NCBI RefSeq assembly: GCF_000143415.4
Contig: NW_003314370.1
Location: forward strand, 341,298 to 363,943
Length of the DNA stretch: 22,646 bases
Direction of reading: 5' to 3'
From: Selaginella moellendorffii
Taxonomy: Eukaryota > Plantae > Lycopodiophyta
The position numbers were made by a program, and so were the translations under genes. Of the stretch, positions 280 to 20,225 are shown piece after piece. The notes under the pieces were generated by a model, which was not told the origin of the DNA, searched no databases, and was given only the letters and a program-made list of their open reading frames with translations. Numbering within the stretch: position 1 is the first letter of the stretch; each line of letters begins with the position of its first letter.

Positions 280-1359
280 TTAGATTTTTGGATTTGGAAC
301 AAATGCTAATGTGTGTGACATGGGCCAATCTTTCGGCCATGGCTGAGCTTCATCGGTTTCTTTCATTAGAGGGCACCATTTAAACTTGACTGGCGTCACA
401 AGCTTTTCAACCTTCCACACTCCAGTCTTCAAATCAAGCACCGTTTGATTCCATGGAACATGGTGGAACTCATTATCCGAGCAAATAAACACTTTCTTTC
501 TCCTATACGGGACAATTTCAGCACAAACCCATTTTTCCTCCTCTTTTACAAACCCGTCAACACGTTTTACCAGTGATAAACGCATGGGCCCGTTCATGAA
601 TCTCACGGTGACGAGCTCTCCTCTCAACGAGACTAATCCAAAAGCACCATACTTGTAGTCCTCCAAGCTTTCCAACTTCCCCACAAGCACACATTCATCA
701 TTTTGAGGCTTGTAAACCCAGTGGCCGCTTTCCCCTAAGATGTGGCAGTGCTCAAAATCAGTCCATGCAACCCTATGTCCCCTGTATCTTCCATTCCCGA
801 CCGTTCTCCACTCGTTCTGATCATGATCATGACCACCCGCAGTATAAGCATACGCATAAATGGTACCAAAGACGACAAAAGATATGCAAAAGCTGCTGCC
901 GTCCTTGGCCGCAAGCACGGCGAAGTTCTCAGGTTCAATCCAATCCTCCGTCAAAACGTCATGGCAGTGTGGCAGCGTCACTGAGCTGGATCGTACCAAG
1001 GGATTGTTTATCACCAAAGAGACCATATCTTCCTTTGTGTAATACCTCCACAACACCCAACCATTTGAGCTAGCGACTGGAATGCTTGATAGTGAAACTG
1101 ATACCTCAGGTGGCAGAAAAAAGGTGTTGGGATCGTAGAGCTGGCCACTTTTAGGGTTGAAGCACGCCAGCCTTCGAAGTTCCACTTGAAGAAACAAGAG
1201 TGGAGAATTACACCTTTGCTTGATATCGTTGCCCTCTCTACGAACAAACCCATTCCATTCCCTGCAAACAAGGGATGCTCGAACCAGTGATTCAACATCC
1301 AGCAGCTTGGACAAGATATAAAACCAAAGAACGTCTGGTAATCCCGGGTGTGGTGGCAT
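280..1359 (-). CDS. F-box protein (N-terminal F-box, probable beta-rich substrate-binding C-terminal domain), single exon, 359 aa
   Basis: N-terminal LPDVLWFYILSKLLDVESLVRASLVCREWN matches the F-box consensus (LP...IL..L....L.R...VC+.W). ASSNGWVL...LVINNPL is typical of plant F-box-associated regions. The ORF is uninterrupted. Confidence 0.85.
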   Translation of the reverse strand: MPPHPGLPDVLWFYILSKLLDVESLVRASLVCREWNGFVRREGNDIKQRCNSPLLFLQVELRRLACFNPKSGQLYDPNTFFLPPEVSVSLSSIPVASSNGWVLWRYYTKEDMVSLVINNPLVRSSSVTLPHCHDVLTEDWIEPENFAVLAAKDGSSFCISFVVFGTIYAYAYTAGGHDHDQNEWRTVGNGRYRGHRVAWTDFEHCHILGESGHWVYKPQNDECVLVGKLESLEDYKYGAFGLVSLRGELVTVRFMNGPMRLSLVKRVDGFVKEEEKWVCAEIVPYRRKKVFICSDNEFHHVPWNQTVLDLKTGVWKVEKLVTPVKFKWCPLMKETDEAQPWPKDWPMSHTLAFVPNPKI

Positions 1360-1622: not shown

Positions 1623-3340
1623 ATGCGGCTTCCCAGGATCACTGCTCCGCAGGCCACAATCAGGGCGTGGCTCGGCTCTCATGGTGTGTCGCCCGCCATG
1701 GATTCCTCCGATTCCTTCTCCGCAGCCTGGAGGCCGTGCTTGCTCGCCAGGGAGGGCTTCGGCAACTCAAGGTGAAATTTTCTTCCATTTTGCACGAGTT
1801 TTTAGTTGCTTAGTATTTTTTTTTTCCCCAGTAGTGATGATTCACAGTGGAGGCCGTCACAAAGGGGACTGTACCAATCCTTCAGCTTTCCATCTTCTTC
1901 AGCGAGCGAGCAAGGATTCTGGGCTTCTTCCGGAGGCTTGTTTCGCTCTTCCAGCCGCTGTTTCAGCACGGAGCGTCCAAAGCCAAGGGTAACTTTTAAC
2001 TTATATCTCGATGTTTCTTTTTCTACGCTTCATGTCGTTTTGTTTGAAAATGTAGATATTCGGTAGCATGCCAGAGTTTGTGAAGATCGTCGAGGTCGGG
2101 CCTCGAGACGGGCTGCAAAACGAAAAGAAGATTGTTCCAACTCACATCAAAGTTGAGCTTATACGAAAGCTCTGTGCTTCCGGCCTCCAAGTCGTCGAGG
2201 CCACCAGCTTTGTCTCGCCCAAATGGGTTCCACAGGTAACAAATTTCCAGTTTGTTGCCAGTTTGTTGTAAACGACATGAAAAATTCCTTTTGTTGTAGC
2301 TCTCGGATGCCAAGGAGGTTTTGCATGCCATCAAAAGTCTCCAAGGGAGCAAGTTTCCAGTCCTCACGCCAAACGTCAAGGTACTCTTGATTTCTTTCTT
2401 TCTTTCTTTCTTTCTTTCGCTTAGAATAAGGTCTAGTAGCATCCATGCTGCTCCTCAGGGTTTTCAAGCAGCACTGGATGCTGGAGCAAGAGACGTAGCA
2501 GTTTTCGCAGCAGCCTCCGAGTCATTCTCCAAGGCAAACATAAATTGCACCATCAGCGAGAGCCTGGAGCGCTACAAACAGGTCTGTGATCTAGCAAAGC
2601 AGCACGGCATCTCTGTCCGAGGGTAAGCTAAGAGGCTCGTTTTATCTTTCACCAAAAAAACAAGAGAACGAATTCTGCTTTCATTTTTTCTCACTGCATA
2701 TCATTCCTTCTTCAAGGTACATCTCTTGTGTTGTAGGCTGCCCGATCGAAGGCCCGGTTCCTCCCCACAAAGTTGGATACGTTGCTGGCGAGCTCTACCG
2801 AATGGGTTGCAACGAAATCTCTCTGGGTGATACGATTGGCGTTGGAACCCCTGGTAAGGAAAAATCACTCTTTTATTATCTAAAGCTTGGAACGATTGGC
2901 AGGAACTTTGGTGCCGATGCTCGAGGCAGTAATGTCCGTCGTTCCAGTGGAGAATCTAGCCGTACACATGCACGACACATATGGTCAAGCCTTGTCCAAT
3001 ATCCTCGTAGCTTTACAAGTGAGTGATCAATTTACTCTTCGTTTTTTCTCGTTTCTTCTAGGGAATGAGCTCTGTGGATTTGTTTTAGATGGGAGTGAGC
3101 ACCGTGGATTCGTCCGTGTCAGGGCTCGGTGGCTGCCCCTACGCGAAAGGCGCCTCTGGGAACGTAGCGACGGAGGACGTGATCTATCTTCTAAACGGGC
3201 TGGGCGTCTCCACAAACGTGGACTTGAGCTTGGTTCTCGCTGCTGGAGAGTTTATCTCGCAGCACCTGGGGCGCCAGTCGGGCTCCAAGACCGCTGTGGC
3301 TCTAGGCAAGTCTAGCAGATGCGAGCACTCCAAGATCTAA
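1623..3340 (+). CDS. HMGCL: 3-hydroxy-3-methylglutaryl-CoA lyase; predicted exons 1623-1771, 1832-1988, 2056-2235, 2300-2380, 2459-2622, 2717-2853, 2903-3018, 3089-3340
   Basis: Motifs [42 protein letters not shown], metal-binding HMHDTYGQA and [19 protein letters not shown] are joined in frame by GT-AG introns. The N-terminus [19 protein letters not shown] resembles a transit peptide and the C-terminal SKI is PTS1-like. Exons 1-2 and the start codon are less certain than exons 3-8. Confidence 0.93.
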
Positions 3341-3422
3341 CCATTTGAGAACATGTACAGAATATAATTATTGAAGATCGTCTCACCTGAGATGAAAGAA
3401 AATATTACTATATGGGCACACC

Positions 3423-3444
3423 ATATATAGAGAGAGAGAGAGAG
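3423..3444 (+). promoter_or_regulatory. Putative TATA box (atatata) followed by (AG)8 upstream of CRP-A1
   Basis: TATATA lies ~60 nt upstream of the ATG at 3489 and is followed by a GA microsatellite. An AATAAA at 3797-3802 lies downstream of the stop codon. Confidence 0.45.
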
Positions 3445-3488
3445 CCCATCTTGTAGGCATTCTTCGCTTGGTTTTCTTGCTCTTGACA

Positions 3489-3746
3489 ATGAAGTTGTTT
3501 CTTTTAATGCTGGCAGCGATCTTTCTTGCGGCAGCCATGGTGATTGAGGGAGCGCATGAGGAAGCCAAATGTCACAGGAGGTATACTTGCTTTTTTGGTG
3601 GCCTGAAGTGCAAGGACTACTGTAAGCTTTGCCACTTTGTGAGGCACGGCGAGCACTGCGAGAGGTGCCACTCTGGAAGCTGCTCCTATGGTCGATGCAC
3701 TTGCAAGGGACCTTGCAGCAGCTCCAATTGCCCCGTCTATGCTTGA
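3489..3746 (+). CDS. Secreted cysteine-rich defensin-like peptide CRP-A1 (85 aa, 12 Cys, cationic and His-rich)
   Basis: Hydrophobic signal peptide MKLFLLMLAAIFLAAAMVIEGA. The mature part has C-x5-C-x6-C-x3-C-x2-C-x8-C-x2-C-x4-C-x4-C-x-C-x3-C-x4-C, including the CxxxC, GxC and CxC elements of the CS-alpha/beta fold. The frame is conserved in the duplicate. Confidence 0.85.
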   Translation: MKLFLLMLAAIFLAAAMVIEGAHEEAKCHRRYTCFFGGLKCKDYCKLCHFVRHGEHCERCHSGSCSYGRCTCKGPCSSSNCPVYA

Positions 3747-4001
3747 TAGATCCATCCATCGATCGGAGCTTCGATCGTGCCTGTAAACTCATCATCAATA
3801 AAAACAGTTCACTCGTAAGTCTTTCAGGGACGTTTTGTTCCTTCTAGAGAATATAACGCTTGCAAAGACGACAATTAGTCCTTTTATTAATCTAGATTAC
3901 TCCTCTCTAAAAGCAGGATGATATCTAAGCTCGCTTTATTATACCATTTTAATCTAAGACCACTCGCAGCATTTTTGGTATTTTGTTAACGTGTTACTTA
4001 C

Positions 4002-4008
4002 TATAAAA
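4002..4008 (+). promoter_or_regulatory. Putative TATA box of CRP-B1 (TATAAAA)
   Basis: Canonical TATAAAA 39 nt upstream of ATG 4041, conserved in copy 2 at 12530-12536. Confidence 0.45.
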
Positions 4009-4040
4009 TGATAGAATTATTAGTAGCCAGCAATCTCTGG

Positions 4041-4262
4041 ATGAAGAAAGGAATTGTTATAACTTTGTGTCTGATGCTAGCAATGGCAGTCAACGCTCAA
4101 GACTGTTATAATTTTTATTCCTGCCCACAGGACCCTGCAATTAAATCACACTGCCACACATTTTGCAAGATGTGCCACTTTAATTGTGAGATATGTAACA
4201 GTGGCTCTTGCAATGATACCAAGATATGCATTTGTGATGATTGTCTAGTTGTTAAGTGTTAA
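4041..4262 (+). CDS. Secreted cysteine-rich defensin-like peptide CRP-B1 (73 aa, 12 mature Cys; 15-nt in-frame deletion relative to CRP-B2)
   Basis: Signal peptide MKKGIVITLCLMLAMAVNA, followed by the same 12-Cys scaffold as CRP-A with shared CKxCHF, CExC, SGSC and CxC. An in-frame upstream ATG exists at 4008, but it overlaps the TATA box. Confidence 0.85.
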   Translation: MKKGIVITLCLMLAMAVNAQDCYNFYSCPQDPAIKSHCHTFCKMCHFNCEICNSGSCNDTKICICDDCLVVKC

Positions 4263-4500
4263 AATAATACTGGAGTAAATATTAATATTGGTGTTTTGTG
4301 TGGATTGGCTATCTAAATCTATAATACAAATTGAGAAGCTTTGTTGAATTATTAAAATAGGATCTCTTCTGATAGTTGAACCAAAAGAAAAACAGACTAA
4401 AAATCTATAAATGATAAAACTCTTCATAAATTATAATAGTAGTTTAATTAAATTTACATTAAAACTAAATATATAAAAAGAAATTCCAAAAGGTAAAGAT

Positions 4501-4507
4501 TATATAT

Positions 4508-4576
<69 letters not shown>
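4501..4576. repeat. (TA)n microsatellite, ~76 nt with one interruption
   Basis: Read directly. The equivalent position in copy 2 (13078-13085) is only TATATATA. Confidence 0.98.
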
Positions 4577-6880: not shown

Positions 6881-9800
6881 ATGCCTCGGCTCCGCAAAGT
6901 ATTAAGAGGCATATGTCACCATTTGCCTCCAACTATTGACACTAGCACATATATTCATATTCACAACAACCTTGCATATGCTAATAAAGAAACTAATCTA
7001 AACCTTGAACAGGCTAATTCAAAAATTACTTGAAATCTTGGCAATGCTAATACAAACATAGCATATGTTGATGAAGGTCATACAAATATAAACCTTGAAA
7101 ATGCTAATGAAACTAATACATATATATGTAATTATCACAGTTATACTATATATAAATTAGCACATCAAAAGAATTATAATGACCATACAATACATATGTT
7201 TAATATTGGAAACATGTCATCTGTATGTGTCTTTTGTGGTGCATTACATTTTTAAAATGAGTTAAGATCAATGTGCTGCCAGAATGGAAAGGTTTTCCTT
7301 CCCCAACTTTCATCTTTACCTACTATATTGTGTATGTTTTTTAATGAAAATAAAAACTCCAATTTTAAAATTAACATAAGAAATTTTAACAGTGCTTTGG
7401 CTTTTGCATCAATGGGTGCTAATATTGATAATTTAAGTGGTAAAGGCCCATATTGCTTTAGAATATATGGTCAAATTTATCACAATATTGCTTCAGCATA
7501 TCCTATTGCTAACGTGCCACCATCATATGGACAACTTTACATGTTTGACGCATCTGAGGCTACAAATATTAGAAAGCAAAACGCATTCAACACAAATTGT
7601 GATTCTAATTTATTATTATAATTAGATAACTTGCTAAGAACAATAAACCAGTATACATAAGCTTTTCAAATGTTGTATAATCTTGAATCACAAGAACAAT
7701 ATCACTCAATTTGCAATGGAACTCCAAAACGTGGTGTTTACATAATTGTTAGAAGTGAAAGTACTAATCTACATTGTTATAATTTGCTACAGACTAATGA
7801 TGTTGCTATTGTTTTCACTATTGATGAGGGTGAGCCCTCTTTTGACAGAGAAATATGCATACATCCATAAAATTCACAGTCAACAAAAATCTATATTCTT
7901 AATGAAAATTGTGATCCTATGGTTTATCCTTTACTTTTACCATTTGGTGATAAAGGTTAGCATGAAAAAATCTATCACAATGAGTCACATGTAATGCTAC
8001 TCCAGTACTATGCATATCGATTATCTCAACGAGATAGCATTAGCAACTCTTTCCTTTATCATCAATTGCTACATGCTGAGAAACTCACTCAACAATTTAT
8101 AATTGATGCTTATGTAAAGGTTGAATCTAACAACCTTAATTTCTTTCACACTCATCAAAAATACTTAAAAGTGGATTACTATACAAGTCTTATAGACTAT
8201 ATTAGCAACAAAGCTGCTACTAATAATGCTGAATCTGGAAAAATTGTAATTTTGCCTTTTACATTTTTTGGTAGCCCACGAGCAATGCAACAACATTATC
8301 AAGATGCTATTACTATTGTCACATATTTTGGAAAACCTGACTTATGTATTACATTTACATGCAACCCAAAGTGGCCTGAAATTGTGCAAAATTTACAATT
8401 GAATGAATCACTTGAGGATCCACTTGATCTTATTTCAAGAGTTTTCAATTTAAAGCTTAAAGAATTATTACATGATATAAGTATCAAAGGAATTTTTGGG
8501 AAGTGCATCGTATATGTTTATGTTATTGAATTCTAGAAAAAAGGTTTACCTCATTGTTATTTCTTAGCAATGTTATCAAGCGAAGATAAGATAAAAAATC
8601 GAGACTCAATTGACGAATTTGTCATTGCACAGTTGCCACACCCACTACTAGAACTAGAATTGCGTAACATAATTATAAATCATATGATACATGGTCCATG
8701 TGGTAATTAAATTCTAGAAGCCTTTACATGGAAAATAACAAATACTTTAAGAATTATCCAAAAGAATTTAATGTTGAAATCATTTATTGTGTTGATGGTT
8801 ATCTTGATTACTACCGGCCCAATAACAGACACACTTTCATAAAAAATGGTTGTACTATTGACAATAGATGGGTTGTTCCTTATAATAAATACTTTTGTAA
8901 AAAATATCAAGCACACATCAATGTAGAAATTTGCACTTCTATTAAAAGTATTAAATATTTATTTTAATATGTATACAAAGGTTATGACTGTGCAACATTA
9001 GAATTCCTAATTGCATCTAAAGAACAAGGGACTTTAAATTGGGACGAAATCTCAAGTTTTGTTGATGCTTGATATATTTCTACTCCCGAAGCCATATGGC
9101 ATATATTTAAGTTTTGTATGCATGATAAATCACTAACTATTATACACCTTCCAGTTCATTTACTCAATTTTCAATACATTTATTTCAGACCAGGTCATGA
9201 ACAAGAAGCACTAGAAAGAGCCACTCAAAATGGAACAATGCTTACACAATGGTTCAATTTAAACATGCAAGATACTAATGCAAGGCAATATACATATGCT
9301 CAAATTCCATTACATTACACATACAACAAATCTTCTCATAAATGGCAATTACACTAACGAAAAGCTAAACTTATACCAAGAATGTATTCCATATCTCCTT
9401 CTAATAGTGAGTTGTACCACTTGTGATTTATATTACTCCATAAAAAAGGTGTTATATCATTTGAGGATATACATATTGTCGAAGGTGTTACTTTCTCCTC
9501 TTTTAAGCAAGCAACTATGGCAATGGGACTTTTAGCATATGATTCAGAATGGCAACATTGCATGCAAGAAGCTTCTACTTTTAAAATGCCATCCCAATTA
9601 AGACAATTATTTGTTTTTATTTGTTTGTATTGTTCACTAAAAGATCCAAATCTATTATGGGATCAATTCAAAATTGATATGTCTGAAGATTATACTAGAA
9701 ATGATATAAATTATTTTGACATTGCTTTAATCGATATTAACTCAAAATTCCTACTACACAATAAATTTAATTGTGATTTTGGTTTACCACTCCCAACTCT

Positions 9801-11262
9801 TACTCCCATTATCAAACACATGCTTAATACAGAGATCCCTGACCCATCAGAAGACCAAATAAATGCAAATATAAATCAATTCAGTTATGAATAACATTAT
9901 ATTTTTGAACTCATTATAAATGCCATTGACACTAACCAGCATCAATGTTTCTTTATTGATGAACCTGGTGGTATTGGAAAAACTTTTCTACTTAATACCA
10001 TCATTACAGCATTACAATTTAAAAAAATAAAAGTAATCAGTATGGCATGGACTGGGATTGGAAGCATTTTGCTAAAATATGGTCAAACGACACATATGAC
10101 TTTTAAACTTCCTATTCCTTTAAATGAAACTTCTATTTCTGCTTTAATAATTAATAGTGATGCTGGAAAAACCATTAAACAAGCAAATGTTCTCATATGG
10201 GATGAAATTAGTATGGTTCATACATATGTTTTCTTTGTGGTTGATAAATGTTTAAAGCATCTCAAATGTAATTCTAAACCATTTGGAGGCGTTACAGTAA
10301 TTACAAGTGGTGACTTTCGTCAAACCCTTCTTGTTGTTCCCTATGGCCATAGAACCTCTATTATTTCAAGCTTAGTTAAAATGAATAGACTATAGTCACT
10401 TTTTAGAACACTAACATTAACAAAGAACATGCGTTCAAGCAATCTTTGTTTTTCTGAATGGCTTCTCAAACTTGGCAATGGTGATAATAATTTGAAGTTG
10501 CCATGTCTCCTACCAGATATTATCAAAATACCACATGCATTATCTATCACTACACATGTTGTAAACTTTGTTTTCCCAAATACCAATGATATTATAAATA
10601 TTTATATAGGTGCATCAAAGGTTATTCTCACCCCACTCAATGACGACACATTCAGAATAAATAATAACATTGTTGGAAGACTACCAGATGATCCATATAT
10701 TTATTTGAGCATTGACACAGTTGACTCAGATCACCTTGAAGAGATCTTAATTGAATTCTTAAATTCAATCACCCCATCGGGACTACCACCACACAAATTA
10801 ATTCTAAAACAAAATGTGATTTTGATTCTTCTTAGGAACATATCTCCATAAATTGGTTTATGCAGTGGCACTCACCTCATTCTCAAGCAAGCATCTCAAA
10901 ATGTTTTAGATTGTGAAATTATCAAAGGACAATTCAAGGGATCGCAAGTTTTTATTCCACATATTACCCCTACACCTTCTGATATTGAAATCCCTTTCAA
11001 GATGTACTGAAGACAATTCCCAATTCGTCTGGGTTATTGCTTAACTATTTCTAAATCCTAAAGACAAACTTTCAACTGTGTTGGCATTTACCTCCCCTAA
11101 CCTGTTTTCACACATGGTCAACTTTATGTTGCTCTGTCAAGGTGTAGATTACCTGAACAACTTCGTGTTCAAGTGCTTGCAACCCCCTTTCAAGGCAATC
11201 TTATACCATATGATCAACACTTTTACACTATGAATACAGTCTATGCTGAAATTCTTAAATAG
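6881..11262 (+). pseudogene. Helitron Rep/helicase (RepHel) pseudogene: Zn-finger-like N-terminus, HUH Rep domain, PIF1-like SF1 helicase
   Basis: CVFCGALHF*NE...CCQNGKV; GSPRAMQQHYQDA...GKPDLCITFTCNPKWPEI; VIEF*KKGLPHCYFL (HUH); KYLF*YVYKGYD (catalytic Tyr motif); FIDEPGGIGKTFL (Walker A); LIWDEISM; GDFRQ; QFPIRLGYCLTISKS*RQT; PVFTHGQLYVALSR; C-terminus NTVYAEILK*. It has many in-frame stops and a frameshift near 8705-8727. The start position is approximate. Confidence 0.95.
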
Positions 11263-11787: not shown

Positions 11788-11939
<152 letters not shown>

Positions 11940-11983
11940 CCCATCTTGTAGGCATTCTTCACTTGGTTTTCTTGCTCTTGACA

Positions 11984-12250
11984 ATGAAGTTCATGATGTT
12001 TCTATTAATGCTGGCAGCGATCTTTCTTGCGGCAGCCATGGTGATTGAGGGAGCGCATGAGGAAGCCAAATGTTACAAGAGGTATACTTGCTTTTTTGGT
12101 GGCCTCAAGTGCAAGGACTACTACTGTAAGCTTTGCCACTTTGTGAGGCACGGCGAGCACTGTGAGAGGTGCCACTCTGGAAGCTGCTCCTATGGTCGAT
12201 GCACTTGCAAGGGACCTTGCAGCAGCTCCAATTGCCCCATCTATGTTTGA
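11984..12250 (+). CDS. Cysteine-rich defensin-like peptide CRP-A2 (88 aa; extra Tyr in the CxxxC motif)
   Basis: Near-identical to CRP-A1, with a 6-nt insertion in the signal peptide and a 3-nt insertion giving CKDYYC. The ORF is open, but the native upstream region is replaced by the Helitron. Confidence 0.75.
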   Translation: MKFMMFLLMLAAIFLAAAMVIEGAHEEAKCYKRYTCFFGGLKCKDYYCKLCHFVRHGEHCERCHSGSCSYGRCTCKGPCSSSNCPIYV

Positions 12251-12577
12251 TAGATCCATCCATCGATCGGAGCTTCAATCGTGCCTGTAAACTCATCATC
12301 AATAAAAACAGTTCACTCACAAGTCTTTCAGGGACGTTTTGTTCCTTCTAGAGAACATAACGCTTGCAAAGACGACAATTAGTCCTTTTAATAATCTAGA
12401 TTACTCCTCTCTAAAAGCAGGACGATATACCGTTTTATTCTAAGCTCGCTTTATTATAACGTTTAAATCTAAGACCACTTTACAGATTATCGGCTTGCTT
12501 GGCTTAGCATTTTTTAACGTGTTACTTACTATAAAATGAAAGAATTATGTGATCACTTAGTAGCCAGCAGTCTCAAG

Positions 12578-12814
12578 ATGAAGAAAGGAATTGTTATAAT
12601 TTTGTGTGTGGTGCTAGCAATGGCAGTCAATGCTCAAGACTGTTATAATTTTTATTCCTGCCCACAGGACCCTGCAATTAAATCACACTGCCACACATTT
12701 TGCAAGATGTGCCACTTTAACAACGAAGGAAACAATTGTGAGATATGTAAGAGCGGCTCTTGCAATGATACCAAGAGATGCATTTGTGATGATTGTCGAG
12801 TTGTTAACTGTTAA
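12578..12814 (+). CDS. Cysteine-rich defensin-like peptide CRP-B2 (78 aa, full-length 12-Cys scaffold)
   Basis: Signal peptide MKKGIVIILCVVLAMAVNA. CKMCHFNNEGNNCEIC keeps the C-x8-C spacing seen in CRP-A. Confidence 0.85.
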   Translation: MKKGIVIILCVVLAMAVNAQDCYNFYSCPQDPAIKSHCHTFCKMCHFNNEGNNCEICKSGSCNDTKRCICDDCRVVNC

Positions 12815-13205
12815 GATAATAGTAAATATTAATATTGGTGTTTTGTGTGGACTGGTTTTCTAAATGTATAATTATTAAATAATTTCAATTGGTGAATTAT
12901 TAAAATAGAAGCTTTTATGATAGTTGAACCAAAAGAAAAACAGACTAAAAAATTCTATAAATGATAAAAATCTTCATAAAGTATAATAGTAATAACTACA
13001 CCAATTTAATTAAAGTTATATTAAAACTAACTATAGCTGATAAAAATATATAAAAAGAAATTCAAAAAGGTAAAGATTATATATAGTTTTTAGTCCTATT
13101 GTGTCAAAGATAAACTAGGCAATATCATAAAAATTATGAACAAAACCATAACCAGAATAAATCACCAGATCAAAACGCAGATTTTGTAGGGTTTAAGCAA
13201 AGCCA

Positions 13206-14500
13206 ATGGCAATAGATCCAGCAGACACTCGCAAGCAATGGCTGCTCTCCAGGGACGAATGCAGGTGCTGCTGCTCTTCCACACGACCCAAAATCCTTCT
13301 CTCCATTGCGGCTCTCGCTCTTCTTGTCACTGCAGCAGTGGTGATTGGAGCAAGCGTTGGAGCAACTCGAGCATCCGCCAGGAATCACCGGCACAAGAGG
13401 AGCTCCAATGCGGCCACATTCGACGAGAATTACAACATCTCCTGGTCGGGAGATCACGTCCGGCTTCTCAACGGCGGCCTGCTCGCGGACATTCTGCTCG
13501 ACAAGCAATCCGGTAAGAGAAACTCTGTTATTTCATGGATTTCCTTCCTTTGTGATCGATCTGTGCGTGATCTCCTAGGGGCCGAATTCGGATCTAAGAG
13601 ATCCTATCTCTTTGGCCATCTCAAGATGCAAATGAAGCTCGTCGCCAATGACTCGGCTGGAACAGTAACAGCTTTCTATGTAAGCATCAAGTTTTCTTCC
13701 AAGATCTCTGTCAATGTCTTCCAAGAACATTGGATCTCATACAGTTTCTCGATCGATTTGACTCGTCCAGATGGCGTCACACACGGAGAATCGCGACGAG
13801 TTCGACTTTGAGTTCTTGGGCAACAGATCCGGGCAGCCATACGCGCTACAGACGAACATCTATGTCAATGGAACCGGTGGAAGAGAGCAGCGAATCCTAC
13901 TGTGGTTCGATCCAAGCCTCGATTATCACACGTACTCTGTTCTCTGGAACCAGTACCAAGTCATGTAAGAGAAATCTTTTCCTTGCTTTTGCCAGAAGTT
14001 CTTTTCACTCTTGGAAGCAAAGCTTGCTTTTTAAAAAAACTTCTCGCTAGAAATTTAACTTACTTTGGTTCTTTCCTTCTTTTTGGAGCAGATTTTTCGT
14101 CGACGACACTCCAGTGCGAGTCTTTCGGAACAACAGCCACCTCGGAGTCCCCTACGCGTTTAGCCAGCCAATGCGGATCTTTGGGAGTATGTGGAACGGA
14201 GAGCAATGGGCCACAGTTGGCGGCCTCGAGAAAACCAACTGGAACTACGCACCTTTCATCGCTTCCTTCCAAGACTTTGCCATCGATGGATGCGACCCCT
14301 CCTCGTCTCCTGGTGATCCGGGATTTTGTTTTAGCTCTGGGAATCGAAATCACTGGTGGGATGAGGAAAAGTACCGTGTTTTGGACGTTGGTCAGCTGGA
14401 TAATCTCGGCTCCATCGTGAGAAACTACACCATATACGACTACTGCACTGATACCAAGCGCTATTCACCAGTTCCTCCAGAGTGCGGTGCCAATCCCTGA
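13206..14500 (+). CDS. XTH: Xyloglucan endotransglucosylase/hydrolase (GH16); exons 13206-13512, 13579-13679, 13771-13964, 14092-14500
   Basis: Catalytic [13 protein letters not shown] with adjacent N-glycosylation site, [31 protein letters not shown], and XET_C-type [18 protein letters not shown]. The 101-nt and 194-nt internal exons fit the typical XTH four-exon structure. Confidence 0.96.
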
Positions 14501-16762: not shown

Positions 16763-19366
16763 TCACCAGAAGTTGGCACAGGAGCACTTGCCATCGCCAA
16801 AGACGTGAAACCTGCTTGAATCTCTGCAGAGTATACGTCTCGCTTCCATGGCGGAGACCGCGCAGAAGACGAGATGGCAGTCATCACAAACCCGGAGGTT
16901 CTTTATGATGCGCACTGTTCCTCCCGGACGAGTGTTCAGCAGCGCACACGCAAGAGCCAGCTTCTCACTGTGTCCACAGAGCGCGTCCTCTTTTGCCTCG
17001 TCACAAATGTTGTGGTGGGAGACGCTAGCGAGATGAGCGACGTAGCCGGCTTCTTTCTTGATCCTCGCCATGGTTTTCTTGAGCAAAGCTTTGATCTCCT
17101 CCCCTTGAGGATGATGGCTTGTATCACCCGCACTGAACCTGTGAACTACGCCTCTAGGATCTGTCCACCAGCTCTGTCCTTGCCGTCGTAAAACCCGAGC
17201 ACTCGTTCTCATCGTCTCGATCTTAGATTGCTCCTCCCACATTCCCAAGCTTCCATAGATGCTTCCCATGAGCATGTAGCCTGCGACGTCCCGGTCGTCC
17301 AGCTCCATCAGGGACTCAAAGGCCAGCTTCCCAACTTCCAAGTTCTTCCACTTCTTGCATGCCCCCAAGAGCGTCATCCAGGCCACGGGAGTTTTCCTGT
17401 AAGGCATGGCCTTGACCATATCCAGCGCCTCGCTGAGCTTGTTTGTTCGTGCCAAAGTATCTATCATGCAGTGGTAGTGCTCGATACCAGGCTCGATCGA
17501 GTACCTGGACCGCATGGCTTCAAAGTAGCGTCTTCCTCTCTCGACTAGACCAGCATGGCTGCACGCTGTTAACAGGCAAAGAAACGTTATACCGTCCGGA
17601 AGTACGTTCTCTTCCTGCATCGCTTGAAAGAGCTGGAATGCGTACCTGGTATTTCCTTGGCGGCTGTAGCCGGCCAGCAACGCAGTCCAGGCTATGGTAC
17701 TCCGCACGTCCGTGGAGACGAAGCTTTCTTCCGCTTCACCTACGTTGCCGCATTTCCCAAAAAAATCCACGATGCCAGTGCTCACGGCGTGCTCCTTTTC
17801 GAACCCAGCTTTATAGATCTCCCCGCATACGTATTTCCCAGCTTCCAAAGATGCAAGTCCCGCACAGGCCTTGAGTACTGCTATGAAAGTTACCGAGTCC
17901 GGAGTGCAGCCATCCTCCCGCATTCTCATGAAGAGCTCCAAAGAAGAGTCGGCTTCACCGCTTTCGACATATCCCAGGATCAGGGCGTTCCAAGTGACCA
18001 GGCAGCGAACGGGGAGCTTGTCAAACACGCTCTGAGCTTGTGCCAGGCCTCCACAGTTCGTGTACATGTCGATCAAGCTGCTGGCTATGAAATTGTCTGT
18101 CTCGTAATCATAAGCAGCAGCTTGAGAGTGAATAGCGCTCCCCTTCTCCAGCACACCTTGTTTAGCAGCCTTTCCGTCGAGCTGAGTGGCATCCTCGTTC
18201 GCAGCAAGCCAAGTGCAAGCCTTGAGTGCAACGAGAAAGGTGACACGATTTGGAGAACACAGAGCTTCTTGCTGCATGAGCTCGAAGAGCCTCAAACCCA
18301 ATCCTGCCTTCCCGTTTTCCACGTAACCCATCAGCAACGAGTTCCAAGATACCACAGTCTGCCACCTTGTCCTGTCGAAAGCTCTTCGAGCATCCAGAAT
18401 GCTTCCACAGCTCGCATACATATCCACCAGACTGTTCCCGACAAACGTATCGAGCTCGCATCCAATCTTCAGCGCTTCAGAGTGAACAGCCATGCCTTTC
18501 TCCAAGGCATTCATCTTCACAGCCTCTCCTTCAACCAGCCTTCCATTTTCCTTCGCCGCCAAGCTCGCGCAAGCTTTAAGTGCCGCGAGGATCGTAACTC
18601 GGTTTGGCTCACAGATCCCTTCTTCTCGCATCGAGTCCAAAAGTTCCAGAGCTAGATCACCACCGCCATTCTCTGCGTACCCCAGCATCAGTGCGTTCCA
18701 CGAGACAACACTGCGAGTGACCATCTTATTGAAAACCTGGCGAGCCATTCTCAAGCTTCCACACTTGGCAAACATGTCGATGGCACAGTTCTCCACGAAA
18801 GTATCCCTGTCGTAGCCAGCTTTCGCTGCCCTGGAGAAGATCTCCAAGCCTTTCTCCAGAGACTCTACCTTGACTACCTTTCCATCTACGAGCTTTCCAT
18901 CCTCCTTGGCCGAGAGCAACGAGCAGCCCTTGATAGCAGCCACAAAAGCTCGAGAGTTTGGCAAGCATCCTGTAAATTCCATCCTATGGAACAAATCCAA
19001 GCTCTCCTCAGCTTGCCCGTTCTCGGCATAGCCCAGCATCAATGCCGTCCAGGACACCACATTCGGAGAAGAAATGTGCTCGAAGACGCTGCGAGCATCG
19101 GCCATGCTTCCAGATTTCGCGTACATGTCGACTAGAGTGCTGGCGATGTAGATGTCGGCGATCATCCCACTCTGGATTGCGTGATCGTGCATCTTCCTCC
19201 CGAAATCGAGCTCCTCTGTGCTGGCGCATGCCTTCAATCCGGCAAGAAGCGCACTGGCACTCTCCGGCTCGCATCGCTGCTGCTGGATATTTCTTGTTCC
19301 AATGCGATAGCTCCGAAAGAAGGACGACTTACATGATCTGCTGATGAGACGGCAACGCCAGAGCAT
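16763..19366 (-). CDS. PLS-class pentatricopeptide repeat protein with E and DYW-type cytidine deaminase domain (organellar RNA-editing factor), 867 aa
   Basis: Repeated P-L-S motifs (LVDMYAKSG..ARSVF...NVVSWTALMLGYAENG), E region (HYHCMIDTLAR...WMTLLGAC), deaminase HSEKLA...KNLRVCDDCH, and terminal RFHVFGDGKCSCANFW. The Arg/Ser-rich N-terminus resembles a mitochondrial presequence. Confidence 0.96.
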   Translation of the reverse strand: MLWRCRLISRSCKSSFFRSYRIGTRNIQQQRCEPESASALLAGLKACASTEELDFGRKMHDHAIQSGMIADIYIASTLVDMYAKSGSMADARSVFEHISSPNVVSWTALMLGYAENGQAEESLDLFHRMEFTGCLPNSRAFVAAIKGCSLLSAKEDGKLVDGKVVKVESLEKGLEIFSRAAKAGYDRDTFVENCAIDMFAKCGSLRMARQVFNKMVTRSVVSWNALMLGYAENGGGDLALELLDSMREEGICEPNRVTILAALKACASLAAKENGRLVEGEAVKMNALEKGMAVHSEALKIGCELDTFVGNSLVDMYASCGSILDARRAFDRTRWQTVVSWNSLLMGYVENGKAGLGLRLFELMQQEALCSPNRVTFLVALKACTWLAANEDATQLDGKAAKQGVLEKGSAIHSQAAAYDYETDNFIASSLIDMYTNCGGLAQAQSVFDKLPVRCLVTWNALILGYVESGEADSSLELFMRMREDGCTPDSVTFIAVLKACAGLASLEAGKYVCGEIYKAGFEKEHAVSTGIVDFFGKCGNVGEAEESFVSTDVRSTIAWTALLAGYSRQGNTRYAFQLFQAMQEENVLPDGITFLCLLTACSHAGLVERGRRYFEAMRSRYSIEPGIEHYHCMIDTLARTNKLSEALDMVKAMPYRKTPVAWMTLLGACKKWKNLEVGKLAFESLMELDDRDVAGYMLMGSIYGSLGMWEEQSKIETMRTSARVLRRQGQSWWTDPRGVVHRFSAGDTSHHPQGEEIKALLKKTMARIKKEAGYVAHLASVSHHNICDEAKEDALCGHSEKLALACALLNTRPGGTVRIIKNLRVCDDCHLVFCAVSAMEARRILCRDSSRFHVFGDGKCSCANFW

Positions 19367-19789: not shown

Positions 19790-20225
19790 AGCAAAGCATG
19801 GAGATCGATTCGGCTACGTAGGCATCACTTCGCTGGCTTTCTCGAAAGTGAGCCACGGGCCGAGAGGCTATGGCGCTTCCAGCAGCAGCGACGAAGGAAT
19901 GCAAGAGTTCTCACAAAATCGAGCATGTACGCGAGGTACGAGCCTTGCTGGGTGTTTGATGCCATGGAGCACCACGATGTTTTTCTCTGGACAGCTCTCA
20001 AGCACGGCTACTCCAAGAACGGCCAGGGAGAAGTGACTTTGGAGCGCTTCTCGCAGATTTTCTCTGGACAGCGCTCATGCTCACCGACTCCAAGAATGGC
20101 CAGGGAGACGTGGCTTTGGAGCTGATGCTGCTACTCGCAAGGCAGTGCTGTCTGAATTCTCGTGCTCAAGGTCCTTGCTAGCTTGGCTGCAAAGGCAGGA
20201 AAATCGGTGGAAAAGTGGTGAAGAG
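19790..20225 (+). pseudogene. Degenerate PLS-PPR gene fragment, divergent from the intact PPR gene
   Basis: EIDSAT*ASL; MYAR...VFDAMEHHDVFLWTALKHGYSKNGQGEVTLE; a second copy of this motif ~78 nt later; and a remnant agcttggctgcaaag...ggtggaaaagtggtgaag resembling LAAK...GKVVK of the neighbour. It has stops and frameshifts. Confidence 0.7.

What the first reader, a model, noticed from the sequence alone, without database searches (positions are those of the whole stretch)
3489..4262. Pair of secreted peptides sharing an unusual 12-cysteine extended-defensin scaffold
Seen in the sequence: CRP-A and CRP-B are very different in sequence but share C-x5-C-x(6-9)-C-x3-C-K-x-C-H-F-x6-C-E-x-C-x-S-G-S-C-x(4-5)-C-x-C-x(2-3)-C-x4-C after a signal peptide. 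Established: the CxxxC, GxC and CxC elements define CS-alpha/beta defensins, which in plants typically have 8 Cys (occasionally 10), and the 12-Cys snakin/GASA pattern needs a CC doublet that is absent here. Inference: this is an 8-Cys defensin core plus three extra Cys in the helix-to-strand loop and one C-terminal Cys. That would make a six-disulfide or metal-binding defensin-like family that I cannot assign to a named class. Such short intronless genes are easily missed by annotation.
Basis: partly seen in the sequence, partly recalled or inferred. Interest (0 to 1): 0.75.

Follow-up and report, generated by a model that had tools for sequence, protein, structure and literature searches.

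The report
Copsin-like 12-cysteine defensin genes, spikemoss
Four small, unannotated genes in the spikemoss Selaginella moellendorffii encode secreted peptides whose 12 cysteines follow the order of copsin, a six-disulfide antibacterial defensin so far described only in a mushroom; expression and activity are untested.

Summary
CRP-A (3489-3746) and CRP-B (4041-4262) are intact, intronless ORFs for a signal peptide plus a 12-Cys domain. The roughly 1.1-kb cassette is repeated 8.5 kb downstream as A' and B', with a Helitron in between.

A named class does exist. The only Pfam match is PF18251, 'Fungal defensin Copsin', at 24.1, 22.8 and 17.8 bits for three divergent paralogs, all just under the cut-off of 25. 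Copsin (2MN5) is the only small Cys-rich PDB chain that the family profile finds. That match is not significant (E 7.9), but ten cysteines align in register. Copsin's published sequence has the same order of 12 Cys, and its N-terminal Gln is shared by B and B'.

The only relative among 1.84 billion protein representatives is a mis-annotated S. moellendorffii protein, EFJ26050.1. None of the four peptides is in a 15-billion-protein collection. The flanking genes are plant genes, 98% identical to S. moellendorffii.

The fold is untested because the AlphaFold models were poor, and I could test neither expression nor activity. The scan found this family before on other DNA of this genome (s1-419394). 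I could not reproduce its actinobacterial relative.

Verdict: a plant variant of the copsin-type six-disulfide defensin, probably antimicrobial. Interest is moderate.

The parts
3489..3746 (+). CRP-A: intronless CDS, 85 aa. About 21 aa of signal peptide, then a 64-aa cationic (+5), His-rich (6 His) 12-Cys domain with frame C5C6C3C2C8C2C4C4C1C3C4C.
   Evidence: Pfam PF18251 at 17.8 bits
4041..4262 (+). CRP-B: intronless CDS, 73 aa (an in-frame upstream ATG at 4008 would give 84 aa). Predicted cleavage after AVNA leaves a 54-aa anionic (-2) peptide starting Q-D-C. The loop between Cys5 and Cys6 is cut to 3 residues by a 15-nt deletion.
   Evidence: no Pfam hit
11984..12250 (+). CRP-A': duplicate of A, 88 aa, 94% identical. 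A 3-nt insertion turns the helix motif CxxxC into Cx4C.
   Evidence: no Pfam hit
12578..12814 (+). CRP-B': duplicate of B, 78 aa (upstream in-frame ATG at 12536). It keeps the full 8-residue Cys5-Cys6 loop and gives the best copsin-family score.
   Evidence: Pfam PF18251 at 24.1 bits, E 3.9e-5
3444..4510 (+). Cassette copy 1 (A, a 295-nt spacer, B, and 3' flank), bounded by a short (GA)n run and the (TA)38 array at 4501-4576.
11938..13087 (+). Cassette copy 2, 90-97% identical to copy 1. It starts directly after the (AG)73 array at 11791-11937.
3424..3429 (+). TATATA, 60 nt upstream of the CRP-A ATG; candidate TATA box (inferred). Absent from copy 2, where the (AG)n array takes its place.
   Evidence: read from the sequence
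4002..4008 (+). TATAAAA, 33 nt upstream of ATG 4041 and overlapping ATG 4008; candidate TATA box of CRP-B (inferred). Conserved in copy 2.
   Evidence: read from the sequence
3797..3802 (+). AATAAA, 51 nt after the CRP-A stop codon; candidate polyadenylation signal. Conserved in copy 2.
   Evidence: read from the sequence

Best explanation
The window carries two tandem copies of a two-gene cassette from the nuclear genome of Selaginella moellendorffii. Each gene is a single exon encoding a signal peptide and a 54-65-residue domain with 12 Cys. These Cys follow the order of the fungal defensin copsin: C..C..CxxxCxxCH..CxxCxxxxC..CxC..C..C. I read them as plant representatives of the copsin-type CS-alpha/beta defensin. 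Under that reading the CxxxC helix is pinned to the CxC strand, GxC pairs with Cys2, and the other six Cys form three further disulfides. After the signal peptide is removed in the ER, the peptide would be secreted into the apoplast as a very stable six-disulfide knot. In the B type the new N-terminus is Gln, which could cyclise to pyroglutamate as in copsin. It most likely acts as an antimicrobial, by analogy with copsin, which binds the peptidoglycan precursor lipid II. Shown here: the ORFs, their duplication, Cys conservation, lack of annotation, and a weak but specific similarity to copsin. Inferred: secretion, disulfide pairing, fold and antimicrobial function. After the duplication each cassette picked up one structural lesion, a loop deletion in B and Cx4C in A'. 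One canonical A and one canonical B therefore remain between the two cassettes.
For: ORFs and 12 of 12 Cys conserved across A, A', B, B' and EFJ26050.1. PF18251 'Fungal defensin Copsin' is the only Pfam match for three paralogs of 41-54% mutual identity: B' 24.1 bits (E 3.9e-5), EFJ26050.1 22.8 bits (E 1e-4), A 17.8 bits (E 3.5e-3). The family profile against 177,635 PDB sequences returns copsin 2mn5_A as the only small Cys-rich chain. The alignment covers copsin residues 6-54, has Cys2 to Cys11 in register, and shares CxSCH, CVxC and CxCxxPC. The copsin sequence in PMC4381204 Table 1 gives frame C6C7C3C2C6C2C4C7C1C3C2C, against C5C6C3C2C8C2C4C4C1C3C4C for A. The four inner spacings (3, 2, 2, 4) and the CxC are identical, and His follows Cys5 in all. 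[quoted passage not shown] B and B' start Q-D-C and EFJ26050.1 starts Q-Q-Q-C after the predicted cleavage site. The nearest ESM-Atlas clusters for the EFJ26050.1 domain are all CS-alpha/beta families (drosomycin-like, scorpion Toxin_3, nematode ABF, termicin, plant DEFL), with scores of 0.79-0.83, which are leads only. Gene-like features: a hydrophobic leader, TATA and AATAAA motifs conserved between copies, all three coding indels in frame, and pN/pS of 0.42 (A) and 0.79 (B). Plant context: F-box, HMG-CoA lyase, Helitron, GH16 and PPR-DYW genes; the PPR protein is 98% identical to a S. moellendorffii protein.
Against: Every similarity score to copsin is below formal significance. No paralog reaches Pfam's cut-off of 25 bits, and B and A' give no hit at all. 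The PDB match has E 7.9 after a 19.9-bit composition correction. The 4-sequence profile and single peptides do not find copsin. The Pfam model covers only the first 39 residues (7 Cys). Both AlphaFold models are poor (pLDDT 46.6 and 56.3) and show no helix at CxxxC, and Foldseek finds nothing. There is no expression evidence, the pN/pS values rest on 8-9 substitutions each, and no propeptide like copsin's is evident. The B type is anionic, which is unusual though not unknown for antibacterial defensins.
Confidence: 0.6

Rival explanations
1. These are a lineage-specific plant defensin-like (DEFL) family that added four Cys to an 8-Cys cis-defensin core on its own. Under this reading the likeness to copsin is convergence on one workable six-disulfide layout, and the function could be signalling rather than killing microbes.
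For: Similarity to copsin lies mainly in Cys positions and stays below threshold. The outer loops differ in length. There is no propeptide. The nearest Atlas clusters are generic CS-alpha/beta families, including plant DEFLs. Plant DEFLs are known to diversify quickly in tandem arrays.
Against: No plant defensin or DEFL Pfam model (Gamma-thionin, Defensin_like, SCRL) matches even at E<=10, whereas the copsin model matches three paralogs. Shared non-Cys features include His after Cys5, an N-terminal Gln two residues before Cys1, and CxCxxPC. No other plant protein is found among 1.84 billion representatives.
Confidence: 0.2
2. The ORFs are unexpressed or decaying relics: a duplicated cassette carried along with Helitron activity and no longer making functional peptides.
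For: No annotation and no matching protein in a 15-billion-protein collection. Each cassette has one structurally suspect copy. pN/pS for B is 0.79. Cassette 2 lost the TATATA motif upstream of A'.
Against: All four ORFs are intact after 3-10% nucleotide divergence, and all 48 Cys codons are kept. All coding indels are in frame. The A and B types have kept the scaffold over a much older divergence (22-29% non-Cys identity). A third paralog exists on another scaffold.
Confidence: 0.1
3. The peptide is a metal-binding small protein. Its paired CxxC(H) knuckles (CKxCH ... CExC) and the six His of the A type would bind Zn, Cu or Ni rather than form six disulfides.
For: Weak PDB hits to the RecR zinc finger (E 0.5) and to the Fe-S region of the [NiFe] hydrogenase small subunit (E 0.1). 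The A type is His-rich.
Against: Those hits are not significant and come from CxxC spacing alone. A signal peptide sends the protein to the oxidising ER. Copsin has the same CxxCH...CxxC segment and forms six disulfides (PMC4381204, PMC6272156). An even count of 12 Cys is kept in every paralog.
Confidence: 0.05

Closest known systems
Copsin (CPP1) and copsin-paralogous peptides CPP2-7 of Coprinopsis cinerea (Pfam PF18251 Defensin_5; PDB 2MN5)
   Same: Secreted. The mature domain is 54-65 aa (copsin family 57-65). The 12 Cys are in the same order, with identical inner spacings CxxxCxxC(H), CxxCxxxxC and CxC. The B type and EFJ26050.1 have Gln at the predicted mature N-terminus. Genes sit in tandem duplicates. 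It is the only Pfam and PDB match.
   Different: Plant host, not fungal. Scores are below Pfam's threshold. The outer loops differ: Cys5-Cys6 is 8 or 3 residues against 6, Cys8-Cys9 is 4-5 against 7, and Cys11-Cys12 is 4 against 2. There is no evident propeptide. The A type lacks the N-terminal Gln and the B type is anionic. Fold, disulfide map and lipid II binding are untested.
Defensin-like peptides (DLP1-10) of C. cinerea and the N-terminal DLP domain of its GH24 lysozymes (PMC6461984)
   Same: The architecture is a signal peptide directly followed by a 12-Cys domain with no propeptide, in an expanded, clustered gene family.
   Different: DLPs are about 100 aa long. Their activity is also unknown.
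Classical plant defensins (Pfam PF00304 Gamma-thionin), including 10-Cys floral defensins
   Same: Secreted plant peptides with CxxxC, GxC and CxC elements. The Atlas feature search places the family near them.
   Different: They have 8 (rarely 10) Cys. No Pfam match appears even at E<=10. Classical genes usually have an intron in the signal-peptide region (my own knowledge), whereas these have none.
Snakin/GASA peptides (Pfam PF02704)
   Same: 12 Cys, secreted, plant.
   Different: A different Cys pattern with CC doublets, no Pfam match, and a different fold.

Membership tests
Copsin family (Pfam PF18251 Defensin_5) | Score at or above Pfam's gathering cut-off (25 bits) | tested here: not met
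   B' 24.1, EFJ26050.1 22.8 and A 17.8 bits; B and A' give no hit. It is the only family hit in each case.
Copsin family (Pfam PF18251 Defensin_5) | Twelve Cys in the order C..C..CxxxCxxC..CxxCxxxxC..CxC..C..C | tested here: met
   Hand comparison with the copsin sequence printed in PMC4381204, plus the HMMER alignment to 2mn5_A with Cys2-Cys11 in register. Exceptions: A' has Cx4C, and B has a 3-residue Cys5-Cys6 loop.
Copsin family (Pfam PF18251 Defensin_5) | Conserved N-terminal Gln of the mature peptide (pyroglutamate in copsin) | tested here: inconclusive
   B and B' (AVNA|QDC) and EFJ26050.1 (VEA|QQQC) have Gln at the cleavage site predicted by the -3/-1 rule. A and A' do not. The cleavage site is inferred; no SignalP run was possible.
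Copsin family (Pfam PF18251 Defensin_5) | Prepro-peptide organisation (signal, propeptide, mature) | tested here: not met
   The 12-Cys domain starts 0-6 residues after the predicted signal peptide. This resembles the DLP layout instead.
Copsin family (Pfam PF18251 Defensin_5) | CS-alpha/beta fold with six disulfides | tested here: inconclusive
   AlphaFold2 gave pLDDT 46.6 and 56.3 from 4-5-sequence alignments, and Foldseek against the PDB found no match.
Copsin family (Pfam PF18251 Defensin_5) | Lipid II binding and activity against Gram-positive bacteria | not testable with these tools
   Needs recombinant peptide.
Plant defensin (Pfam PF00304 Gamma-thionin) | Match to the family model; 8-Cys frame | tested here: not met
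   No hit at E<=10 for any of the four peptides; they have 12 Cys.
Snakin/GASA (Pfam PF02704) | Match to the family model; CC doublets within the 12-Cys pattern | tested here: not met
   No hit at E<=10; no CC doublet in any copy.

The most novel reading that the evidence does not exclude
Copsin-type six-disulfide defensins are not confined to fungi. A lycophyte carries an expanded, unannotated family of them. The family either came from a fungus or another microbe by horizontal transfer (the genes are intronless, and no other plant relative was found among 1.84 billion representatives) or descends from an ancient 12-Cys cis-defensin lineage lost elsewhere. The peptides act as lipid II-binding antibacterials in the plant apoplast.
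Probability: 0.25. Interest if true: 0.7.

Novelty: new variant of a known kind. Interest (0 to 1): 0.5.

Why it matters
Copsin is a heat- and protease-stable lipid II binder and has been studied as an antibiotic lead. Its 12-Cys scaffold has been reported only in a few fungi, and I found no paper that links it to plants: zero papers hold both 'copsin' and 'Selaginella', and zero hold 'copsin-like'. A plant branch of this scaffold would widen the known range of six-disulfide CS-alpha/beta defensins. It would supply natural loop variants, both cationic and anionic, for structure-activity work. It would also pose a testable question about horizontal transfer versus ancient origin. The case further shows that short intronless peptide genes are missed or mis-fused in the S. 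moellendorffii annotation.

Tried and rejected
- **Word-index protein searches.** CRP-A and the 4-peptide alignment found no relative.
- **Full HMMER search of 1.84 billion representatives.** It found only EFJ26050.1 and one spurious repeat protein.
- **Collection scans.** Two scans of bacterial and archaeal genomes and one metagenome scan gave no confirmed relative. I therefore could not reproduce the actinobacterial relative reported by earlier finding s1-419394.
- **NCBIfam.** Nothing.
- **ESM Atlas.** No usable hit with B'.
- **PDB sequence searches.** Single peptides and the 4-sequence profile gave only insignificant CxxC-driven hits to RecR, hydrogenase and WDR59.
- **Structure.** Two AlphaFold2 jobs gave low-confidence models and Foldseek found nothing. 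I did not run VIA-align on such models because the matches would be meaningless.
- **Exact look-ups.** None of the eight start-codon variants of the four peptides is in the protein collection.
- **Closed or unavailable.** The copsin paper itself (PMC4263892) and the supplement of PMC6461984 are not held.
- I did not score the copsin sequence against a domain-only HMM of the five Selaginella peptides. That sequence exists only as text in a paper and has no reference, so I compared the Cys spacings by hand.
- **Readings rejected.** Snakin/GASA, classical plant defensin, a zinc finger, and contamination; the flanking genes are plant genes.

Full report
**Observation**

CRP-A runs from 3489 to 3746 and encodes 85 aa. 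CRP-B runs from 4041 to 4262 and encodes 73 aa; an in-frame ATG at 4008 would extend it to 84 aa. A six-frame scan for Cys-dense stretches finds only these two and a second pair, A' (11984-12250) and B' (12578-12814). A tblastn of the window finds no further copies or relics.

Each product has a Lys-containing N-terminus, then a hydrophobic core of about 12-15 residues (Kyte-Doolittle mean 2.8-3.5), then small residues at -3 and -1 (AVNA|Q in B; AAA|M or IEG|A in A). A domain with exactly 12 Cys follows. All 12 Cys align across the four peptides, although the A and B types share only 22-29% of their non-Cys positions.

- B has H-F-x1-C, because a 15-nt in-frame deletion removed five residues that B', A and A' keep.
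- A' has C-x4-C instead of C-x3-C, because of a 3-nt insertion.

**Anatomy of the locus**

The two genes form a cassette of about 1.07 kb (3444-4510). It recurs at 11938-13087 with 90-97% identity. The left edge is a GA microsatellite, short in copy 1 and (AG)73 at 11791-11937 in copy 2. The right edge of copy 1 is (TA)38 at 4501-4576. Between the copies lies an AT-rich Helitron, with a Helitron_like_N ORF at 7994-8536 and a Pif1 2B-domain ORF at 10429-10851.

The flanking genes are plant genes:
- an F-box gene (280-1359, minus strand);
- the last exon of an HMG-CoA lyase-like gene, ending at 3340;
- a GH16 fragment (13206-13811);
- a PPR-E-DYW gene (16763-19366, minus strand).

The PPR protein is 98% identical over its full length to a Selaginella moellendorffii protein. 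The window is therefore S. moellendorffii nuclear DNA, probably the alternative haplotype or another assembly, and not a microbial contaminant.

**Are they genes?**

There is no expression evidence. The indirect evidence is as follows.
- All four ORFs are intact and all 48 Cys codons are kept.
- The three indels inside coding sequence are 6, 3 and 15 nt. Of nine indels outside it, three are multiples of three.
- pN/pS between copies is 0.42 for A and 0.79 for B, but each value rests on only 8-9 substitutions.
- TATATA sits 60 nt upstream of the A start codon, TATAAAA sits 33 nt upstream of ATG 4041, and AATAAA lies 51 nt after the A stop. The last two are conserved in copy 2.
- The stretch between ATG 4008 and ATG 4041 diverges more between copies than the sequence downstream, and it overlaps the TATA motif. 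I therefore prefer 4041 as the start. The mature peptide is the same either way.

None of the eight possible precursor sequences is in a 15-billion-protein collection, so the genes are unannotated.

**Relatives**

Word-index searches found nothing. A full HMMER profile search of 1.84 billion representatives found one true relative, P0001 (E 2.7e-7). This is EFJ26050.1, SELMODRAFT_413459, of S. moellendorffii. Its first 85 residues are a signal peptide plus a 12-Cys domain that is 52-54% identical to A. The remaining residues are an augmin subunit 5 (HAUS5) protein. The gene model has clearly fused a small defensin-like gene to its neighbour.

Scans of bacterial and archaeal genomes (twice) and of metagenomes found no relative. 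One caveat applies to all of this. Peptides of this kind are evidently missing from annotations, so their absence from protein databases says little about other plants.

**Family assignment**

Pfam gives exactly one family for these peptides: PF18251, Defensin_5, 'Fungal defensin Copsin'.

| Peptide | Bits | E-value |
|---|---|---|
| B' | 24.1 | 3.9e-5 |
| EFJ26050.1 | 22.8 | 1e-4 |
| A | 17.8 | 3.5e-3 |
| B (loop deletion) | no hit | - |
| A' (Cx4C) | no hit | - |

The curated cut-off is 25 bits. No other Cys-rich family appears even at E<=10. That includes Gamma-thionin, GASA, SCRL, and the toxin and knottin families.

A profile of the five sequences, run against all PDB sequences, returns copsin (2mn5_A) as the only small Cys-rich chain. 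The score is not significant (7.7 bits, E 7.9, after a 19.9-bit composition correction, from a profile lengthened by the HAUS5 part). However, the alignment spans copsin residues 6-54 with ten Cys in register and shares CxSCH, CVxC and CxCxxPC.

The copsin sequence printed in PMC4381204 gives these Cys frames:

| Peptide | Cys frame |
|---|---|
| Copsin | C6C7C3C2C6C2C4C7C1C3C2C |
| A | C5C6C3C2C8C2C4C4C1C3C4C |
| B' | C5C9C3C2C8C2C4C5C1C2C4C |

The inner spacings (3, 2, 2, 4, 1) are identical, His follows Cys5 in all, and only the outer loops vary.

Copsin is a CS-alpha/beta defensin with six disulfides and an N-terminal pyroglutamate, and it binds lipid II (PMC4381204, PMC6272156, PMC6461984). 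[quoted passage not shown] B and B' start Q-D-C at the predicted cleavage site, and copsin starts Q-N-C. C. cinerea also has ten DLPs built as a signal peptide plus a 12-Cys domain with no propeptide. That is the layout seen here.

A language-model feature search with the EFJ26050.1 domain lists only CS-alpha/beta families as nearest clusters. Its scores of 0.79-0.83 make these leads only.

**Structure**

Both AlphaFold2 runs used alignments of only four and five sequences. They gave pLDDT 46.6 and 56.3, with no helix at CxxxC, and Foldseek found nothing. These models are too poor to count for or against a CS-alpha/beta core.

**Mechanism proposed**

The steps shown are the sequence features above. 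The rest is inferred:
1. Co-translational entry into the ER and signal-peptide cleavage.
2. Formation of six disulfides: by analogy, Cys2-Cys8, Cys3-Cys9 and Cys4-Cys10 as the canonical CS-alpha/beta trio, plus three more among Cys1, 5, 6, 7, 11 and 12.
3. Secretion into the apoplast.
4. Antimicrobial action, possibly through cell-wall precursors as in copsin.

The A type is cationic (+5) with six His, and the B type is anionic (-1 or -2). The two may therefore have different targets. A signalling role cannot be excluded.

After the duplication each cassette picked up one lesion in a structurally critical place: the loop deletion in B and the Cx4C in A'. These are exactly the two copies that lose the Pfam match. 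One canonical A and one canonical B remain, one in each cassette. This looks like relaxed constraint followed by complementary decay, but that is inference.

**Rivals**

- *Independent elaboration of a plant DEFL, with convergence on copsin (0.2).* The sub-threshold scores favour it. The exclusive copsin hits and the shared non-Cys features count against it.
- *Unexpressed relics (0.1).* Not excluded without RNA data, but the scaffold has survived a deep A/B divergence.
- *Metal binding (0.05).* It rests only on CxxC spacing, and copsin forms disulfides with the same segment.

**Novelty**

I found no paper that links copsin to Selaginella or that uses the term 'copsin-like'. Searches for Selaginella defensins turned up nothing relevant. 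This scan had already reported copsin-like defensins on another piece of this genome (s1-419394). My Pfam hit came before I read that note, and I agree with it on the copsin likeness. Its claim of a closer actinobacterial relative could not be reproduced with these paralogs.

I class the finding as a new variant of a known kind. It has the copsin-type scaffold, but it is in a plant, scores below the family threshold, has different loops and lacks a propeptide.

**Steps not done**

- I did not score the copsin sequence against a domain-only HMM, because that sequence has no reference and would have had to be typed.

Noticed in passing
P0001 (EFJ26050.1, SELMODRAFT_413459), residues 1-85 versus 86-767: This annotated S. 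moellendorffii protein is a gene-model fusion. A signal peptide plus 12-Cys copsin-like domain is joined to an augmin subunit 5 (HAUS5) protein (Pfam HAUS5 at 92 bits; PDB AUGMIN subunit 5 at E 3.5e-36).
   Followed up: partly
window 7271-10851: An AT-rich (about 30% GC) Helitron lies exactly between the two cassette copies, with a Helitron_like_N ORF at 7994-8536 and a Pif1 2B-domain ORF at 10429-10851. Whether it caused the duplication is open. The cassette edges are microsatellites: (AG)73 at 11791-11937 and (TA)38 at 4501-4576.
   Followed up: partly
window 3489-3746 versus 4041-4262: The adjacent paralogs differ sharply in base composition. A has GC 0.52 and GC3 0.62; B has GC 0.37 and GC3 0.39. 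The same contrast is seen in the second cassette. Unexplained.
   Followed up: no
window 4182 (B) and 3616 (A' equivalent 12117-12119): Each cassette has one structurally lesioned gene (B: five-residue loop deletion; A': CxxxC changed to Cx4C) and one canonical gene. Only the lesioned copies lose the Pfam copsin match. This may be complementary decay after the duplication.
   Followed up: partly
window 16763-19366 (-): An intact 866-aa PPR-E-DYW gene is 98%, not 100%, identical to its annotated S. moellendorffii counterpart. This suggests the window is the alternative haplotype or a different assembly.
   Followed up: partly
window 19981-20122: Two 65-nt direct repeats, 77 nt apart and 86% identical, lie just upstream of the PPR gene region. 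Not examined.
   Followed up: no
window 3337-3798 (-): A 153-aa antisense ORF with a TTG start overlaps CRP-A. It is probably a mechanical ORF and was not examined further.
   Followed up: no
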